A DNA stretch of 64,000 nucleotides from Thalia democratica. Lineage: Eukaryota. The notes beneath the pieces are model-generated. The model was not told where the DNA came from. It saw only the letters and a list, made by a program, of their open reading frames with translations, and made no database searches. The DNA lies in contig OZ241830.1 in NCBI GenBank assembly GCA_965202585.1, positions 73,904,001 to 73,968,000 of the forward strand, read 5' to 3'. The translations under genes were made by a program, and so were the position numbers. Positions 1,681 through 16,100 of this stretch are shown here, one piece after another; within the stretch, counting starts at the first letter, position 1, and every line of letters starts with the position of its first letter.

Positions 1681-3020
1681 TGAAAAATTACAGTTTACAA
1701 TTATTAGCTATTGTATAAACAATATATTTTAAAGTCTTTATTTTATATATCAGTGGTGCTTCAATAGCATCTGGGAGTTTGTGTGCTCCGGAGTCCTGAG
1801 GTCTTTGAAAAACTCTGTCATTTTATAACTAATAATTAAATTTTTTATTTTCAACTCAAATTTCACTTAATATGACTGTCTTTTGTTTTATTTATCAAGT
1901 TAATTAAGAATTAGTCTTAAAGATAAAATTTTCACAAATAAAGACGTTAAAATATATCTATTTTTAAAACTTGTTTGTTTTTTTTGAATTTATATGTAAG
2001 ATTAAATATATACTTATTAGAAGGTTTTTAAAAACTTTTTTAAATATGTGTTTAAAGTAACACAATTCAAAAATATAAAAACAAAAAATTTCTTACAACC
2101 GACTAAAATCAATTTAATAAAAAAACTAAGGACCAAAAAAAAACTAAATGCTTACAAAGCGTAATTGAATATAGAGTATTATTAGGTTTAAATTTCTGTA
2201 AAAAAAACTTAAGGTTTTTTAGAGAAGTAATGAAATTATATACGTGACAAATTGAAGTTTATTCAAGTTACAAAAAATTTGAAATTTGAAACCATCAGGA
2301 TTCTTAACGTAAAAAAGGTTATACCAAAGTGAAATACAATCATATTAACATTTTAGTTTCAATTAGAAACATAAAAAATATTTCAGTTGTAAATTTAACA
2401 AAAATCCAAAAATTCGAAAATTTTAACAAAGCCTTAAAACTTTGTTATTAAAGTATATAAAGCTCTAACCTACTTAACTTTATATAAACAAAAGTTTAAA
2501 TAACGAAGCTACATAAACCAATAGAAAAAACTGTCTAGAAAAGGATGCAAGAACTGCCAAGAGAGTTAGTTTTAATATCAGCAAACTACTCTGGAGGTTG
2601 GTTTTAATTTGGTTTCCGAAGACGAACTATCTTAGATGTTCAAAGTTTGGAGAGAATTTTTTCATCAAATTTTTTCACATTTTGATACTTGTAAGGTTAT
2701 GAACTTTCAAAGAGTCTGATATCTTTTCTGGCGATAGGTCTATTAATAGCTTGGAACCGCTACCATTGTTAATGCTATGTTTGGTAAAGTAGTTTTCTTT
2801 GGTTAAACTATTTAATAATCAAAACCGAATGAACGACAACTCAAATTTTAGTATTTATGAGTTATTGTTAATTATTTTTTTAAAAGAAAAAAAAACTTAA
2901 AAGTTTACCATTATAATTTTATTGAGTAGACCTACAAAAGCTTTTTTACTAATTAAATATACATACTATCTTTTGAAATATGGCTGAAATAAGTTTTAAA
3001 GTTTAATAACTTTTAATAAC

Positions 3021-3106
3021 TACGACTCGATAACCGAAAAGTTCCTTTCTACACCAGGTCTTTAGACCAAACTTTTTGAGCGCTTTTTTTATTGTTCAAA
3101 AAAAAA
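3021..3106 (+). mobile_element. ~120-nt SINE-like repeat, copy 1 (5'-truncated)
   Basis: cgactcgataaccgaaa..acaccaggtc..gaccaa..tgagcgctttttt..gttcaa. Confidence 0.75.
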
Positions 3107-4540
3107 GTATAACTATTAATTTACTGTTTTTATAAGGGTGGTTGTTCGGGTTTTTTACCATTATAGTCGCAATTTTAAGACCTACAAGGCGTTTTTAACT
3201 TTTCTAAACAAATTAAACTTTTGAGATAAAACCCCTTAAACTTGTTTGGAAGAACTTGAATTGTCATGTAACCTCATAACCAACCGTTTTACTTACTAAC
3301 CAATCATTAGTCATAGTCTTTACCTTATCAACATTGTACATTTTCGCTAACAAATAAACTTACTTATTTTTAAATTTAGAAACATAAGTAGAGAGAAAAT
3401 ACTTATATTTACTACTAATTTTGATCGAAAAATATTGTGCGTTATGAAAATGTTGAACAAAAAATCTAGTTTTTATGAAAATTATGGTAACGAAAACATA
3501 TAGTGCTATTTTTTGAGCTATTTTTTGTATTTGAACTTTTTGTTGTGATGTGGAGATTGAAAGCATACTGTTTGTATAACTTAAAAGATAGTAATTAGCA
3601 AATAGACTAACTATAAATAGAATCTTTACAGTAATATGTTTAATTTGAAATCAAAAACAATCGACGTTTATTCTTACAATAAAACATGTAAGTATATAAC
3701 TAATATTAAAAATTTATATCTATTTTATCGTGTGGCAAAGAAAAATATTGGTTTAGGAAAAATTCTAAACATGTTAGTTCAAACTAATTAACTAAAACAC
3801 AAGAAAGTTAAATAGACTATTTTCGATAATATTTATAATTTTTTACAATTTTTAGTTGTAAGTGTCATTTTTCGTGTTTTCGTTTTTTAACTATTCATGA
3901 ATATCAAAAATTTTAAACAATGAAAAAATCTTAAGACTCTTTTTAAGCTTAAAATAATAAACTAATTATTTTAAAGTTGATTTACTTTAAAAAAATATTC
4001 CAATACACTTCAAAAGTTCTTTGGTAAGCACACTTGATATTTATTTGAAAAAAAATTTTTACTAAATTATAAAAAAAAATGTCGAGTTGAAGCTTAAAAA
4101 CACTGTCTATTGTTAATTATTTCATTATAACTTTTTATTTACAAATAAGTATTAAACTAAAATAAGTATAAACTTTCGTAGTATGAAGAAAACTAAGTTC
4201 TTAAGAATTGTTAAACTTATTTTTAAATTAAAAAAGGTTATTAGAATCTAACAGACCAAAATGAGTTTTAAGAAAAAAACCTATTTTTTAACATAAAAAC
4301 AGTAAATAACTAAAACAACTTGGCCGATTTTTTTTTAAACAAAGTTGACTGTAGGAACCCACAAAGTGTTATTTTATACACCAACTATTTCTCTTTAGTG
4401 TTGAGGTGACTACGGCTTGCGTAAGTTCATTATTTTTACTACAAATAGACACAAGCGCAAAATTTGTTTCTTACTTTAACATTAAATAGAAACTTTGATC
4501 AACTTGTTTTATTTTTTTTTTAAAGAAGATGCATGCACAG

Positions 4541-7676: not shown

Positions 7677-9330
7677 AGTCTAATAACTAACTTTGAAGTA
7701 ATCTTAACAGCATTCTTTCAATCTTTACTTTACAATAAAAGTTTTACTTCTCCAGCAGTTGAGATCTCTCTATTTGTTTTCTTAAAACCAAAACATATGT
7801 TAAAAAGTTTTAGTACAAAAACTTGCTCTGTCTGAACGTTTGTGTTACCATGATTTCCAAAAAAAATTAATTACTCATTCAACGTTTTCATAACGTTATT
7901 CTTCGAATGAATCAAAGTAGTAAAGATGGGTGTTTTTCTCTACTTGTACTTCTTAACTAAAGTTCGGTTTATTTATTTGTTAATGAAAATAGACAATGTT
8001 GGTAGAGCAAAGATTGGTTGGTGTAGCGAAAACGGTAGGTTATGGTTACATCGTAATTCAAATTCCTAAAAAGTTGTTCAAGGAGTCTCAACTAAAAAGT
8101 AATATACATCTTTCTTAAAAAAGAAATGCCGTTGAGATTTAAATATTAAGATTGTAATGGGAACAAAAACATTTTTTTAATAAAAGTAAAAAACTATAAA
8201 ATACTATAGTTTAGTAAGTTTTGAAACATATACTTGCGATAACTCAAAAAATAATTTTAATTTTTAATAAGAAAAACGATTTTGTAGGTCTAAAAAATAA
8301 GACTGTGATGGTAATTTTTTTCTATTATAAAAGATTGTTAATATCTCAGAACTCAAATAGCCGTGCACCGGTTTTAATTATTTGTACTAATAGTGTTAGC
8401 AGTTCAAGTTTTTAATATACCGTTTTAACAGAAACAATATCATATTTTATGGCAGTTTATAACCTTTTGAAAGTATTAAAAAACACAGAAATTTTTAGTA
8501 ATCATCCTCTTTAAATTTCAACATGAAAGATAATTCATTTTCAGATACCAATATAAAACTAACCTATAAGTTTGTTGAATTCTAAACTAAATCCATTGGG
8601 AGTTTTTTGCATCATTTTCTAAAAATATGTTTTATTCATAAATGTATGTAATTTCTTTGTTTTTATATATTTTTAGTTTAAAATTGAGTAAGTTAAAAAT
8701 GTATAAAAATGAATATTACAACTTCGTATTAAGTTGATTTAAGTCTGTGGTGAGTAATTAAACATTTTGACTATTTTATAAATTTAATGGCAAGATATTT
8801 TTTTATGATTTTAACTAAAGCTACAATTTTTATTTTAAATTTGTTTTTTTCGATTAAGACTTTTGTACCTTAACGATCCTAATGGCTTTAAATCTTGATA
8901 TTTTTGTTAATTAAACAAACTTAACAATTTTAAAAGTATAAGTTTGTTCTATTTATATTACAGAATATTTGTTTACTTAAGTATTTTACTTATCTAATAA
9001 AAATAAAACTTAGTTACTTTTATTGAACTTACATACTAATGCTCTTTATTTTATTATACTTTATAAACACTTTCAAATATTGTGATTCTAGCAAATGACT
9101 TTCAGTCAATCAAACTTCACTGAGCAATTTTTTGTTTTTTATTCTTTTTGTAAAAATTACTTTATTTAACGTACATATATACAACCAAGTTTTTAAATCT
9201 GTTCTTATAAATAAATAAATATATATATATATATAGAATTAAGTTATTTAACTTAATAAATTAGATTTTTCACACTGAGCCCACCTTGAGGGCTTTATTA
9301 TTAAAAAGGTTTATTTAAAGATGAAAAACT

Positions 9331-9371
9331 CAAAGGACTCGAGTTTCGTGACTATTCACTCATCAGCTTCA
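9331..9371 (-). ncRNA. Minimal type I hammerhead ribozyme HH1 (GUC)
   Basis: Reverse complement reads uugaag-CUGAUGA-GUGA(auag)UCAC-GAAA-C(UCGA)G-UC-cuuuga: complete core, 4-bp stem II, palindromic stem III loop, stem I with G-U pairs. Confidence 0.85.
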
Positions 9372-9654
9372 AAACAAGTTTAAAATAAAGCACAAAACAA
9401 AATCACGAATGAAAGTTAAAATTTTTTTGCATAAATAGATTATGACGTAATTTTGAAACTATCAAAAATCATGCAAAACGGCTGGTGCAAAAATTAATTC
9501 GCCAATCGACAATAAACTAGCAAAAGTTCATATAACTTCAGTGAGTTACTATTTATTAGGAGAGATAATTGTAAGAGATAAAGATAAAATTAAGATGCAA
9601 ATTGAAATTTAGGTTATATTAAGATGAAATTAAAACTTGTTAAACTTTAAAATT

Positions 9655-9697
9655 ATGAGCTGATGAGTGAATAGTCACGAAACTCGAGTCCTTTGAG
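9655..9697 (+). ncRNA. Minimal type I hammerhead ribozyme HH2 (GUC)
   Basis: gag-CUGAUGA(9660-66)-GUGA auag UCAC-GAAA(9679-82)-CUCGAG-UC(9689-90)-cuu. Core identical to HH1; stem I only ~3 bp. Confidence 0.8.
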
Positions 9698-9786
9698 TTT
9701 TGTATCTTTAAATAAACCGTTTTAATATATATATAATTATTATATAGTATTATATATAATTTATTGAAATGGCGATTTTAAAATTT

Positions 9787-9843
9787 CTGGTACATATGTT
9801 TCATAAAGCTTTAATTTTTCATAAAGCTTTAATCATCAGCCAG
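9787..9843 (-). ncRNA. Hammerhead-like motif HH3 (GUA), variant stem II
   Basis: Reverse complement reads cugg-CUGAUGA-u-uaaagcuuu(augaaaaauu)aaagcuuua-u-GAAA-C(AUAU)G-UA-ccag: 4-bp stem I, 9-bp stem II closed by a U.U mismatch. Confidence 0.65.
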
Positions 9844-9983
9844 TTAAATTCAAAACAAAAAGCACTGTACTAAACAAAGATACAAAAGTTATGCAAAAAA
9901 AACAAAAAACAGTATGACGTAATATTGTACATTACAAACTTTTGTATCTTTGTTTAGTTCAGTGCTTTTTGTTTTGAATTTAA

Positions 9984-10040
9984 CTGGCTGATGATTAAAG
10001 CTTTATGAAAAATTAAAGCCTTATGAAACATATGTACCAG
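9984..10040 (+). ncRNA. Hammerhead-like motif HH4 (GUA), variant stem II
   Basis: ctgg-CTGATGA(9988-94)-ttaaagctttatgaaaaattaaagccttat-GAAA(10025-28)-CATATG-TA-ccag; inverted copy of HH3. Confidence 0.65.
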
Positions 10041-10126
10041 AAATTTTAAAATCGCCATTTCAATAAATTATTTAAAAGCCCTCCAATTGGGCTCAGTAGA
10101 AGGTGTTTAAGTTTGAACATTAACCT

Positions 10127-10171
<45 letters not shown>

Positions 10172-13104: not shown

Positions 13105-16100
13105 CTAGCTCTTGTACGTCCTGATGCTCTGCTGTATCTTGGTCCTGCATATGGGGCACTGCTTGAGCTTGCCGGCGCACTGAACGCAAGTACATAAATG
13201 ACCGCACGGTATGAAGCACACGTCGGCTTCACTGTCCAGGCACACCTTGCACTTCATCTCGTCCGACAGCTGCTGCAACCTCTTCTCCGCTTCGTCCGCC
13301 GCCAACTTGATTGAAGGCGTTGGTTCTGTGAAAAAAATAAAAAACATATTTTACTTATTAATAAAAAAATATATACCTTGTTGCGCATATTAACATTGGT
13401 TGTTGAGAATATTAACAAAATTAATATGCGTTTCTTATGATAATTTAGGTGCAGTGAACATTTACGCGGTAGCTAGCTGACTTAATACTGAATATGAGCG
13501 GTTCGCTGTAATCAAGAAATAGTTTATGAAGAATTTAAAACTGAAAATGTTAAATAAATACAAAACCGATAAAGGCTTGAATGACAATGTTAATTCTGTA
13601 AGGTATGATGATTATATATTTATCACTAATTAAATAATAAAATAAATCTTGATGCGCAACTATTTAAGTGAAAAGTTAGTACGAGTACAAATATTGTGCA
13701 CTATTAATCAAAATTATAGTTAAACCAATATGTTAAAAATAAAACTAGTTGTGGTTCTATCAGCTTGTTTAAACAAAAACTTATGATCTTGCAAAGTATT
13801 TCAAAACTTTATGGATACTGAAAGTATATATACTTGCTTTAAATACCAAAACTAAGTTTAACATGTATGCAGATGTATTTAAATAATGAAACAGTACGTG
13901 ATAAACTGAACTGACCAGCAGTAGAAGTAGAAGGTTTGTTTTCGTTAATTTTTTCTTCTTCTAATTTTTCTTCCAAACTGCATGTGTCTTCGAATAATTT
14001 CGCCACAGAATCGTACTTTGCAGATCCGGTTTCTTCCATTTTTCTAAAGATGCAAACAAAAGTTAAAATTAAGTTTTGAGTGAAAAAAATTTCAGACTTT
14101 AAAATGTTTCTAAAAAGGCTGAATATTCACAAAAACGTCTTATTTCGAATTTAATTTTTAAATAAAACTGTATGTAACCTTACCAGGTTTCGTTAACTAT
14201 TTTTAAAAGATCAGATAAATTTTATTTAAAGACTGAAAGAAAAGTCTTAACAGTACTTCCTACTTACTTTGTTAACACTTTTTTGACGAGGTCTTCTGAA
14301 TACCCCATGTCAATAACGGATTTTGACACGTCATCGTTTAAAAACTCCAAAACTTGTTGTAACCTTTGTTGTTCTTCGGCCTGTGGAAAATTAATTTAAA
14401 CAAATTCAAAAGGGAAACAAACCAGCAAGTTACATTAGAAATAAAATAAAATTTAATATACAATATAATTTTTATTGTTTTACTTATTAATCGGTTGTTT
14501 AAAGAACAAGTTCGTGCAAAATGTTCTTTAATAGTTTTTTTTTTGGCAAGAAAAAAATCAAAAAACAGTACATAGTACCAGACAAACTATTCTGTAAATA
14601 ATGAAACAAACAAAATATTTTTATTTTCAGAAACAACGAGACTTACCCTGGGGTCGTGCACTTGGGGCGGCGGACTCGGCTGCCGCCTCATGTGGGGCCT
14701 GAGCCTGATTCCGTGGGGTCTCTGCGGCAACAGGTCCCGGATGCGGATCCTGGGGGGCCTCGTGAGCAAGTTGTTCTCAGGTCTGTTCAGGTTGGGGAAC
14801 ATGGCGGTTACCCTGGTAACGAATTCGATTCCCTTCCGTTGCAGCAAATACTCGCAACTGATTGGCGGAAAGTTTTTATTTTAAATTCAAAAATTTATTT
14901 TTGTAGTAAAAAAAAATATGTGGTAAATAACAACAACATTTTTGTAAAAATTATAAAAGTTATTACTCTAAACTTAAACAACTTATCAAAAGCTTATAAT
15001 ATAAAAACTCTCTAACTGAGGGCAATTAAATAACAATATATATTCAGATATACAAACTATTTCTTACTGTGGGAACTGGTAATCATACTTAACAAAGTTT
15101 AAAAAATTTATCAAAAGTACAAACAAACAATCAAAAACTCACTGTGGGAACCACTTGGCATGTTCCATCCATGGATCGTCATTTCTCTCCCAGTGCTGCA
15201 ATCCCCCGTTGCAATACCAACATTTGACCCTGTCCCCGTTGCCTAGATACCAGAACCCCGCATCCGCCACCTTTGAAATAAATCAACTAGGTTAGAAATT
15301 TAAATTTATTGATTCGCGGAATTTTTTTAAATAAAATTATTGTCTTACTAAGTTAATCAAATAATTTAATCTTCAGTTACATTAATCTATAATTGAGTTA
15401 AATAATATATAATTGGATTCAAATAAAGTTGAAACAACTATATAAGTACAGAATACAAATTTTTATAGTTTAAAAATAGGTAAAACAGTTTTTATGATAA
15501 TGTATTGTAACTAGTGGTCCAATAGATCCAACTTAAAAAACTAAAAACTAGAATGTAAACCCACCTCACGCAATCCGGCGGTCAGACCATTTTCGTTCCA
15601 ACTTTCAATGTTAGTTTCGAAGGTTTGAAGGCGGGATTCGAGTTGGCGCATTTCCGCATGGTGGGGCTCGTTGCAAGGAAACATTTCTATTTGGTTTGCC
15701 TGTGGGATAGATATTAAAAGTTTTATTATGTAAAAACATAGACCTTTAACTATTGGTTAAATTGAACCAGGTTTGTCTGTAGAAAATAAACTGTTATAAT
15801 AAGTTATATGATATAAAAATGTATAAAACATTTATTATAATTATTACCAGGAAAATAATTAATACATTTAATGTGAAAACAATATTCAAATACTTTAAAT
15901 AAAACTAATTAACTTTAAAGGTTTCTATTAAGTTTGTCTATGAAGTAATATCTATTTAAAATGTCTTTAAAAATTCTAGAGAGCAATTATTGTATTTATG
16001 TATACGGACACAACGAAAAGTGGTTGAATTATTTAAGTTATTCTTTTTTTTTGTTTGAGTTCTTGTACATAATTATAATGTACATTTTCATTTTATATAT

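What the first reader, a model, noticed from the sequence alone, without database searches (positions are those of the whole stretch)
9274..10097. Four hammerhead ribozyme motifs of two types, as two inverted pairs in under 1 kb
Seen: four complete cores (CUGAUGA...GAAA...GUH) in the order minus 9331-71, plus 9655-97, minus 9787-9843, plus 9984-10040. All have a 2-bp stem III whose loop is self-complementary (ACUCGAGU in HH1/2, ACAUAUGU in HH3/4). Established: minimal type I hammerheads with palindromic loop III are typical of Penelope-like element pLTRs and metazoan retrozymes and cleave as dimers, and inverted pLTR pairs occur in PLE insertions. Inference: two related subfamilies (shared gtgcttt..tgttttgaa and attacgtcata upstream) inserted at one site. 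No RT ORF is present, so this may be an undescribed non-autonomous ribozyme retroelement family.
Basis: partly seen in the sequence, partly recalled or inferred. Interest (0 to 1): 0.9.

Follow-up and report, generated by a model that had tools for sequence, protein, structure and literature searches.

The report
Truncated Penelope-like retrotransposon ends with hammerheads
The four hammerhead ribozyme motifs are real, but they are the leftover 3' ends of two related, still-intact Penelope-like retrotransposon families that both landed in one (TA)n microsatellite, so this is an ordinary example of a known kind of mobile element.

Summary
Four type I hammerhead motifs with a 2-bp stem III and a palindromic loop sit at the stated coordinates, against about 0.06 expected per 64 kb.

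They are not an RT-less new family. Each inverted pair is one severely 5'-truncated, head-to-head insertion of an autonomous Penelope-like element (PLE). The two insertions span 9236-9725 and 9750-10129. Both lie in one (TA)n microsatellite.

Full-length copies elsewhere in the same genome carry the same 3' sequences. They are 2.5-2.6 kb units with partial tandem repeats (pLTRs) and one 713-aa ORF. [quoted passage not shown] It also has the RWK, DKT, CxC-linker, CxxC and CxH motifs and the (TA)n targeting described for the "Hydra" PLE clade in 2021. The two families are 79% identical in protein. Many copies have intact frames at 98-99% identity.

Exact ribozyme cores occur 460 times (HH1/2 type) and 132 times (HH3/4 type). 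Sister families keep stem II pairing and the self-complementary stem III octamer, which fits the known dimeric cleavage mode.

At this locus the ribozymes are probably inert cargo. HH2 lacks its native stem I strand, and any transcript is predicted to fold into long hairpins.

The scan has noted many hammerhead, PLE and retrozyme findings elsewhere in this genome. This is a new member of a known kind, of low interest.

The parts
9220..9235 (.). (TA)n microsatellite, left flank of the insertions (target sequence)
   Evidence: Sequence. In other copies the long-form 3' end abuts (TA)n in the same way.
9236..9301 (-). 66-nt 3' 'tail' of the HH1-type PLE copy. It holds two hairpins, AGCCC..GGGCU and UUAAGUU..AACUUAA. 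It is present at only one end of the insertion.
   Evidence: Across about 45 genomic copies the 3' ends fall into two discrete forms. The long form ends ...AACTTAATTC|(TA)n and the short form ends ...AAACCTTTTTA|(TA)n.
9302..9652 (-). 5'-truncated HH1-type ('A-type') PLE copy. It comprises the last 7 codons plus stop of the RT/EN ORF (9652->9630, ..LKFNKF*) and the 3' UTR/pLTR, which carries a TGACGTAA motif near 9439-9449.
   Evidence: 91% identical over 440 nt to full-length copy L057, and 94-96% to at least 40 other copies.
9331..9371 (-). HH1: type I hammerhead with core 9366->9336, stem II GUGA/UCAC, stem III ACUCGAGU, predicted cleavage 9336/9335
   Evidence: (RF00163, 24.3 bits). 460 exact cores in the genome.
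9653..9657 (.). 5-nt junction (ttatg) between the two inverted copies
   Evidence: Alignment to L002 and to the reference copies.
9658..9725 (+). Inverted, more deeply truncated A-type copy with a short-form (tail-less) 3' end. It contains HH2 (core 9660-9690), which lacks its native stem I 5' strand.
   Evidence: Inverted repeat I2, 96% complementary. Short-form end ...CCGTTTTA followed by TA-rich sequence.
9726..9749 (.). Degenerate TA-rich remnant of the microsatellite between the two insertions
   Evidence: Sequence. Both neighbouring copies end in their short form against it.
9750..9936 (-). Inverted 5'-truncated HH3/4-type ('D-type') PLE copy with a short-form 3' end at 9750. It contains HH3 (core 9839->9791, cleavage 9791/9790).
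   Evidence: 93% identical over 189 nt to full-length copy L051. Short-form end CAATAAATTA|TA.
9937..10129 (+). 5'-truncated D-type PLE copy with a long-form end. It contains HH4 (core 9988-10036, cleavage after 10036) and a 59-nt tail (10071-10129) with hairpin AGCCC..GGGCU.
   Evidence: 91% identical over 225 nt to L051. Long-form end ...AACCTTAT|(TA)n is shared by many copies. 132 exact cores in the genome.
10130..10170 (.). (TA)n microsatellite, right flank
   Evidence: Sequence.

Best explanation
Window 9236-10129 holds two independent, dead-on-arrival insertions of two related autonomous Penelope-like retrotransposons of the 'Hydra' clade. Both landed in the same (TA)n microsatellite.

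Inferred steps, by analogy to the Anolis Poseidon element studied in vitro (PMC11167929):
- The element's GIY-YIG nuclease cut the microsatellite and both DNA ends primed reverse transcription of element RNA.
- Reverse transcription started at one of two fixed sites. This gives a long end with a 59-66-nt 'tail' on one side and a short tail-less end on the other.
- Both cDNAs stopped early and were joined head to head.

Shown here: each product is a small inverted dimer of the element's 3' UTR/pLTR, which is where the family keeps its hammerhead ribozyme. Four ribozyme motifs in two inverted pairs follow from that.

In full-length elements the ribozyme sits in each pLTR. Its 2-bp stem III with a palindromic loop lets two copies pair into a double hammerhead that cleaves after C17/A17. 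That is the known, weakly active dimeric mode of PLE ribozymes. Its role in the element's life cycle is still unsettled in the literature.

At this locus the motifs are most likely passive relics. There is no ORF, HH2 is truncated, no two like ribozymes lie on the same strand, and the inverted arms would sequester the cores in long duplexes.
For: Motifs and inverted arms.

Genome copies: the A-type 3' region occurs in at least 40 copies at 94-96% identity, with 2930 first-look candidates.

Coding sequence upstream: ORF fragments of variable length lie directly upstream of the same 3' region in most copies.

Full-length copies: L051 has pLTR 404-609, a 713-aa ORF at 700-2841 and pLTR 2929-3134. 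L057 has the same layout with a 2593-bp period. L058 and L059 are head-to-head full-length dimers with the tail on one side only.

Activity: many 713-aa open frames at 98-99% identity for the D type, and at 78% identity to that query for the A type.

Protein:
- The two families are 79% identical, with RWK41, DKT120, YRDD353, CxCx3C570, IIY..YIG590-607, CxxC670 and CxH700.
- The same residues are invariant in 50 homologues, and the linker is CxCX5C in most of them.
- The AlphaFold model has pLDDT 89. Its best Foldseek hits are telomerase RTs 6zdq and 3du5 at E about 1e-8.
- The C-terminal 152 aa match I-TevI (Z 8.5, rmsd 2.6 over 90 aa), T4 EndoII (Z 7.3) and UvrC GIY-YIG (Z 5.6).
- These features match the published description of the Hydra clade: under 3 kb, RWK, DKT, CxCX5C, CxxC/CxH, no internal CCHH, canonical HHR, (TA)n target (PMC8557442 section 11).

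3' ends: two discrete forms, both abutting (TA)n. This matches the PLE 'tail' signature and the two RT start sites of PMC11167929.

Ribozyme:
- 460 and 132 exact cores, with 0 for the reversed-pattern control.
- Stem II shows a compensatory change, GUGA/UCAC versus GUGC/GCAC, with intermediates rare.
- Sister families have stem III octamers ACUCGAGU, ACAUAUGU, ACACGUGU and ACAGCUGU, all palindromes. ACUUGAGU is self-pairing through G.U.
- The D-type dimer MFE is the double hammerhead.

Architecture: 12 of 12 close opposite-strand D-type pairs among the first 100 sites are in minus-then-plus order.
Against: - No RNA or cleavage data.
- Rfam's hammerhead model scores HH1/2 below the gathering score and misses HH3/4.
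- For the A-type ribozyme, thermodynamic folding prefers an inactive hairpin, GAAACUCGA/UUUGAGUUU. The MFE dimer is -29.0 kcal/mol against -17.9 for the active dimer.
- HH3/4 close stem II with U.U instead of the usual G10.1-C11.1.
- Pfam and PDB sequence searches do not recognise the RT or EN domains. Those assignments rest on motifs and predicted folds.
- Clade assignment rests on published motif descriptions, not on a tree with reference sequences.
- The both-strand-priming origin of the inverted dimers is inferred from another PLE clade.
Confidence: 0.9

Rival explanations
1. An undescribed non-autonomous ribozyme retroelement (retrozyme- or SINE-like) that lacks RT and is mobilised in trans.
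For: - No ORF in 9236-10129.
- Short hammerhead-bearing copies are very numerous.
- Seven sampled A-type copies, counting the window's own, are truncated within about 10 nt of the same point near the ORF stop.
- One other locus, L002, has the same A/inverted-A layout.
- Other scan notes report true 326-328-nt retrozyme families in this genome (untested here).
Against: - The whole stretch is colinear with the 3' ends of autonomous copies and includes the last ORF codons.
- Truncation points in other copies are spread through the ORF.
- The inverted arm differs in length between the window (70 nt) and L002 (93 nt), so the two are not copies of one unit.
- There are no tandem direct units here.
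- The three clusters with closely spaced same-strand type A ribozymes that I fetched are piles of separate truncated insertions, not arrays.
Confidence: 0.05
2. The inverted dimers have been co-opted, or act incidentally, as long hairpin RNA genes. Their double-stranded transcripts would feed small-RNA silencing of the two PLE families.
For: - A read-through transcript of either strand is predicted to fold into near-perfect 70- and 141-bp duplexes, with MFE -382 to -391 kcal/mol for 891 nt.
- Rfam plant and animal miRNA precursor models score the hairpin below threshold (MIR841, 82.9 bits against 200).
- Such mini inverted dimers are common: 24 of the first 100 D-type sites.
Against: - No evidence of transcription or small RNAs.
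- The miRNA hits are below gathering score and are explained by any long AT-rich hairpin.
- The structure is fully explained as an insertion by-product.
Confidence: 0.04
3. A foldback or MITE-type DNA transposon bounded by the 23-nt terminal inverted repeats 9274-9296 / 10075-10097.
For: The terminal inverted repeat is 87% complementary (I21).
Against: - The 'TIRs' are the conserved tail hairpins of two different PLE families. They lie 38 and 32 nt inside the true ends.
- In other loci each family occurs alone with the same ends.
- There is no target-site duplication, and no other genomic copy of the whole 824-bp composite.
Confidence: 0.01

Closest known systems
Hydra-clade Penelope-like elements (Craig, Yushenova, Rodriguez & Arkhipova 2021, PMC8557442)
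   Same: [quoted passage not shown]
- RWK and DKT motifs, a CxC-type linker, and CxxC and CxH around the catalytic E and N.
- No conserved internal CCHH.
- Canonical hammerhead in the pLTR.
- Insertion into (TA)n.
- Partial-tandem pLTRs, inverted 5'-truncated copies and a one-sided tail.
   Different: - The linker in these two families is CxCX3C rather than CxCX5C, a 2-residue deletion. Their homologues have X5.
- The tail is 59-66 nt, against the 30-40 bp quoted for PLEs in general.
- Whether these exact families are already in Repbase could not be checked.
- The host appears to be a marine animal. The phyla listed in the paper are Cnidaria, Mollusca, Echinodermata, Arthropoda and Hemichordata, and the host phylum was not determined here.
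Minimal/dimeric PLE hammerheads (Cervera & de la Pena 2014, PMC4209133; Lunse, Weinberg & Breaker 2016, cited in PMC6765202)
   Same: - Type I topology with a 2-bp helix III and a palindromic 4-nt loop.
- Located in both pLTRs.
- Many sequence families per genome with compensatory changes.
- Predicted to act only as dimers.
   Different: - The HH3/4 type has an unusually long stem II of about 10 bp, closed by U.U.
- Activity was not tested here.
- The published PLE ribozymes cleave slowly even as dimers.
Poseidon PAc from Anolis carolinensis: internal initiation of reverse transcription (Frangieh et al. 2024, PMC11167929)
   Same: Two alternative 3' ends separated by a 'tail'. The tail is present at one end of an insertion. 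Cleavage and extension of both target strands offers a route to inverted dimers.
   Different: Different PLE clade. This is biochemistry in vitro for one element. Here only the genomic signature is seen.
Animal non-LTR retrozymes (described in 2020, from my own knowledge of Cervera & de la Pena 2020; Li, Clavereau & Pollet 2026 preprint, 10.64898/2026.07.22.740005)
   Same: Short non-coding hammerhead-bearing sequences related to PLE pLTRs.
   Different: Retrozymes are tandem direct repeats of a short unit delimited by ribozymes and can give circular RNAs. The window has inverted, not tandem, copies, and each is just a truncated end of a coding element.

Membership tests
Hammerhead ribozyme, type I (Rfam RF00163) | Conserved core CUGANGA ... 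GAAA ... UH at a three-way junction open at stem I | tested here: met
   All four motifs pass the descriptor. Shuffle expectation is 0.055 per window.
Hammerhead ribozyme, type I (Rfam RF00163) | Score at or above the family's gathering threshold (34 bits) | tested here: not met
   HH1 scores 24.3 bits and HH2 22.3 bits. HH3/4 are not reported. The model expects a longer stem III and a short stem II.
Hammerhead ribozyme, type I (Rfam RF00163) | Helices supported by compensatory changes among relatives | tested here: met
   Stem II is GUGA/UCAC or GUGC/GCAC, with intermediates rare. Sister families have wholly different stem II sequences and four palindromic stem III octamers.
Hammerhead ribozyme, type I (Rfam RF00163) | Site-specific self-cleavage | not testable with these tools
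Penelope-like element (PLE) | Reverse transcriptase closest to telomerase RT | tested here: met
   Model pLDDT 89. Top Foldseek hits are TERT 6zdq and 3du5 at E 1e-8, ahead of retron, LINE-1 and group II RTs. YRDD motif present.
Penelope-like element (PLE) | GIY-YIG endonuclease domain | tested here: met
   Invariant Y592, Y605, G607, R616, H620, E676 and N691. VIA-align gives I-TevI Z 8.5, T4 EndoII 7.3 and UvrC GIY-YIG 5.6. Pfam PF01541 gives no hit.
Penelope-like element (PLE) | pLTRs from partial tandem copies, inverted 5'-truncated copies, tail at one end | tested here: met
   L051 and L057 (pLTR-ORF-pLTR), L058 and L059 (inverted full-length dimers). Long and short 3' ends.
Hydra clade of PLEs | RWK motif, DKT in place of DKG, C-terminal EN, element under 3 kb | tested here: met
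   RWK41 and DKT120. R39, R41 and K121 are invariant and D120 is nearly invariant in 50 homologues. Unit length is 2525-2593 bp, compared with PMC8557442 section 11.
Hydra clade of PLEs | CxCX5C linker; CxxC and CxH flanking catalytic E and N; no internal CCHH | tested here: met
   The consensus of homologues is CNCRxKxxC. The two families here have CxCX3C. C670/C673 and C700/H702 are invariant. No invariant Cys/His pair lies between YIG and E676.
Hydra clade of PLEs | Insertion into (TA)n | tested here: met
   Both 3' end forms abut (TA)n in nearly all sampled copies and in the window.
Hydra clade of PLEs | Phylogenetic grouping with reference Hydra families | not tested
   Repbase references and the paper's supplements are not held. 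The nearest named relatives are cnidarian: Sanderia malayensis in a cluster whose representative is 41% identical to the query, and a nearest Atlas cluster recorded as Cnidaria.
Animal non-LTR retrozyme | Tandem direct repeats of a short non-coding unit, one hammerhead per unit | tested here: not met
   Only inverted copies are present, with no direct repeat of the units. The three clusters I fetched are separate truncated insertions.

The most novel reading that the evidence does not exclude
The very common mini inverted dimers of these PLE 3' ends, of which this locus holds two, may be transcribed into long perfect hairpins. These would serve as a built-in source of small RNAs that silence the two most active PLE families, so the element's own aberrant insertions would become its repressors. 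A lesser reading is that the A-type ribozyme's competing hairpin is a conformational switch that keeps monomers uncleaved.
Probability: 0.08. Interest if true: 0.4.

Novelty: new member of a known kind. Interest (0 to 1): 0.15.

Why it matters
This matters mainly for annotation. It shows that clusters of hammerhead motifs in this genome, including inverted pairs without an ORF, are explained by truncated insertions of active Hydra-clade Penelope-like elements. They should not be counted as new ribozyme element families.

There are three minor points of interest:
- The two families look recently active, with many intact 713-aa frames at 98-99% identity.
- The strictly two-form 3' ends extend the 'tail' signature of internal RT initiation, shown biochemically for one vertebrate Poseidon element, to the Hydra clade, and with a longer two-hairpin tail.
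- Four or five sister families keep a self-complementary stem III octamer. This is clean comparative support for dimeric cleavage.

Tried and rejected
- **The 379-bp 'unit'.** My first genome search seemed to show a uniform 379-bp unit. This was an artefact of the query ending at the truncation point. ORF sequence continues upstream in most copies.
- **Pfam.** Searches of ORF pieces, the full ORF and domain pieces found no RT or GIY-YIG family.
- **PDB by sequence.** A profile search of PDB sequences found nothing meaningful.
- **Foldseek on the EN domain.** It gave only weak rows, with I-TevI at E 0.17. VIA-align resolved it.
- **RNA evidence.** There is therefore no expression or cleavage evidence.
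- **Paper supplements.** The supplements of PMC8557442, which hold the Hydra-clade ribozyme sequences, are not held.
- **miRNA and sRNA hits.** Rfam hits to MIR841, MIR1435, mir-239 and SSRC8 are below threshold and reflect the long AT-rich hairpin.
- **Tandem arrays.** Closely spaced same-strand type A ribozymes (about 250-300 bp apart) were tested as possible retrozyme arrays. They are piles of separate truncated insertions.
- **Fixed pLTR boundary.** I tested for a fixed 5' boundary of the pLTR. Upstream pLTRs of full-length copies run on into ORF sequence, so the boundary is not fixed.
- **Host.** The host phylum was not determined.
Full report
**Observation.** A descriptor scan finds four hits in the whole 64-kb window and nothing else. 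The descriptor requires CUGANGA, a stem II, GAAA, a 2-bp stem III closing a 4-nt loop, UH and a stem I. The hits are HH1 (minus 9366->9336), HH2 (plus 9660-9690), HH3 (minus 9839->9791) and HH4 (plus 9988-10036). Two hundred shuffles gave 0.055 hits on average.

Stem III plus loop is ACUCGAGU in HH1/2 and ACAUAUGU in HH3/4, both 8-nt palindromes. The inverted pairs are 70-nt arms at 96% and 141-nt arms at 97% complementarity. Rfam reports nothing at gathering score. With relaxed thresholds Hammerhead_1 hits HH1 (24.3 bits) and HH2 (22.3 bits; gathering score 34) and misses HH3/4, whose stem II is long.

**What the pieces are.** A search of the window's own 802-Mb genome found the HH1-side sequence in dozens of copies at 94-96% identity, with 2930 first-look candidates. 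All of these covered query positions 1-379, which looked like a discrete unit. It is not. The query simply ended where the window copy is truncated.

In most other copies, coding sequence continues directly upstream for variable lengths. The window copy itself keeps the last seven codons and the stop of that ORF (..LKFNKF*, 9652->9630).

Full-length copies have the classical Penelope-like layout:
- In L051 (HH3/4 type), a 713-aa ORF at 700-2841 lies between repeats at 404-609 and 2929-3134.
- In L057 (HH1/2 type), the layout is the same with a 2593-bp period.
- L058 and L059 are head-to-head full-length dimers.

Many copies have uninterrupted 713-aa frames at 98-99% identity to each other. Both families therefore look recently active and autonomous. 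The two proteins are 79% identical.

**The protein.** Pfam and PDB sequence searches do not recognise it, which fits a very divergent clade. The motifs are clear:
- RWK at 41 and DKT at 120;
- YRDD at 353;
- a CxCx3C..C linker at 570;
- IIY...YIG at 590-607;
- CxxC at 670 and CxH at 700.

The same residues are invariant in an alignment of 50 homologues from public metagenomes and genomes, where the linker is mostly CxCX5C.

An AlphaFold model built on that alignment is confident (pLDDT 89). Its best PDB matches are telomerase reverse transcriptases, ahead of retron, LINE-1 and group II intron RTs. The C-terminal 152 residues, modelled alone, match GIY-YIG nucleases and nothing else convincingly: I-TevI at Z 8.5 with rmsd 2.6 over 90 residues, T4 EndoII at Z 7.3 and the UvrC N-domain at Z 5.6.

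This feature set is that given for the 'Hydra' clade of PLEs by Craig et al. 2021 (PMC8557442, section 11): short element, single ORF, RWK, DKT, CxC-type linker, CxxC/CxH around the catalytic E and N, no conserved internal CCHH, canonical hammerhead, and insertion into (TA)n. The nearest named relatives are cnidarian. I could not build a tree with reference families, because the references were not available.

**True ends and insertion anatomy.** Aligning the 3' ends of about 45 copies of each family shows two discrete end forms. Both abut (TA)n.
- HH1/2 type: the short form ends ...AAACCTTTTTA. The long form runs a further 66 nt, through hairpins AGCCC..GGGCU and UUAAGUU..AACUUAA, to ...AACTTAATTC.
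- HH3/4 type: the short form ends ...CAATAAATTA. The long form runs a further 57-59 nt to ...AACCTTAT(T).

Mapped on the window, the layout from left to right is:

| Coordinates | Feature |
|---|---|
| 9220-9235 | (TA)n |
| 9236-9652, minus | A-type copy with tail (HH1) |
| 9653-9657 | 5-nt junction |
| 9658-9725, plus | Inverted A-type copy, tail-less (HH2) |
| 9726-9749 | TA-rich remnant |
| 9750-9936, minus | Inverted D-type copy, tail-less (HH3) |
| 9937-10129, plus | D-type copy with tail (HH4) |
| 10130-10170 | (TA)n |

A tail at only one end, together with an inverted 5'-truncated partner, is the published PLE signature (PMC8557442, Fig. 2 legend). The tail corresponds to the interval between two internal RT start sites shown in vitro for an Anolis Poseidon element. 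That element's protein also cleaves and extends both target strands (PMC11167929). This offers a route to head-to-head dimers, which remains an inference for this clade.

Such mini dimers are common. Among the first 100 exact HH3/4-type sites, 24 form 12 close pairs, and all 12 are in minus-then-plus order. The C and D arms are 97% alike but only about 92-93% like other copies. This fits one event per pair.

**Are the ribozymes real ribozymes?** The comparative evidence is good:
- Exact cores occur 460 times (HH1/2 type) and 132 times (HH3/4 type), with zero hits for the reversed pattern.
- Within the HH1/2 type, stem II is either GUGA/UCAC or GUGC/GCAC. The unpaired intermediates are rare, about 7 of the first 100.
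- Sister families found in the fetched loci have unrelated stem II sequences. Their stem III octamers are ACUCGAGU, ACAUAUGU, ACACGUGU and ACAGCUGU, all palindromes. ACUUGAGU still self-pairs through G.U.

This is the pattern reported for PLE hammerheads, which are thought to cleave as dimers, slowly in vitro (PMC4209133; PMC6765202).

Folding gives a mixed picture. Two HH3/4 RNAs give the double hammerhead as the minimum-energy structure. The HH1/2 type prefers an inactive hairpin in which the stem I 3' strand pairs with GAAACUCGA.

At this particular locus function is unlikely:
- HH2 has lost its own stem I strand.
- Each strand carries one ribozyme of each type, and their stem III octamers cannot pair with each other.
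- A transcript of either strand is predicted to fold into long duplexes that bury all four cores.
- No RNA data could be obtained.

**Comparison and verdict.** The finding works like, and by every feature I could test is, a pair of truncated Hydra-clade PLE insertions carrying the clade's usual pLTR hammerheads.

The suggestion of an RT-less new family is not supported. I looked for a discrete short class. Seven sampled copies, counting the window's own, are truncated within about 10 nt of the same point, and one locus has a similar layout but a different arm length. This is a possible hot spot, not evidence of an amplifying unit.

Other notes of this scan report many hammerhead and PLE findings, and true 326-328-nt retrozyme families, elsewhere in this genome. 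I did not test those.

The overall class is a new member of a known kind, of low interest.

Noticed in passing
window 13105-13347 (-) and 15541-15684 (-): The ORF pieces look like the C-terminal RING finger ([15 protein letters not shown]) and a BIR-domain exon of an IAP/BIRC-like gene on the minus strand. The PLE insertions lie about 3 kb downstream of its stop.
   Followed up: no
window 9645-9657; L002:1600-1640; L014, L021, L026, L028, L030 near position 1500: Seven sampled A-type copies, counting the window's own, are 5'-truncated within about 10 nt of TTTTAAAG, 20 nt before the ORF stop. This may be a truncation or template-switch hot spot. The region shares the inverted microhomology AAACTTGTT/AACAAGTTT with the sequence just upstream of the ribozyme.
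   Followed up: partly
window 9331-9371 (-) and all type A copies: The stem I 3' strand CUUUGAGUUU can pair with GAAACUCGAG, which is core plus stem III. The predicted MFE is this inactive hairpin (-11.4 against -0.7 kcal/mol for the active monomer). It could be a folding trap or a switch.
   Followed up: partly
window 9439-9449 and 9913-9923: A TGACGTAA (CRE/ATF-like) motif is conserved in the 3' UTR/pLTR of both PLE families despite strong divergence around it. It is a candidate pLTR promoter element.
   Followed up: no
window 9236-9301 and 10071-10129; many loci: The 59-66-nt tails of both families contain two hairpins. The first stem (AGCCC/GGGCU) is conserved with different loops. The second differs in sequence but keeps pairing (UUAAGUU/AACUUAA versus GUGUUU/GAACAU). 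This suggests a structured RNA signal between the two RT start sites.
   Followed up: partly
L002:1300 (-), L006:1273 (-), L040:1374 (+), L007:1359 (-), L017:3110 (-): Further hammerhead families lie in the neighbourhood of these elements, with other stem II sequences and stem III octamers ACACGUGU and ACAGCUGU. Weaker ORF matches (33-45% identity) in L005, L010, L023 and L028 show more divergent Hydra-type PLE families nested in the same (TA)n clusters.
   Followed up: partly
(runs X1-X7): Parts of the stretch are held by marine metatranscriptome and oligo-dT RNA runs, so the host is probably a marine planktonic animal and the family is expressed somewhere. An unverified scan note mentions a tunicate spliced leader in this genome.
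   Followed up: no
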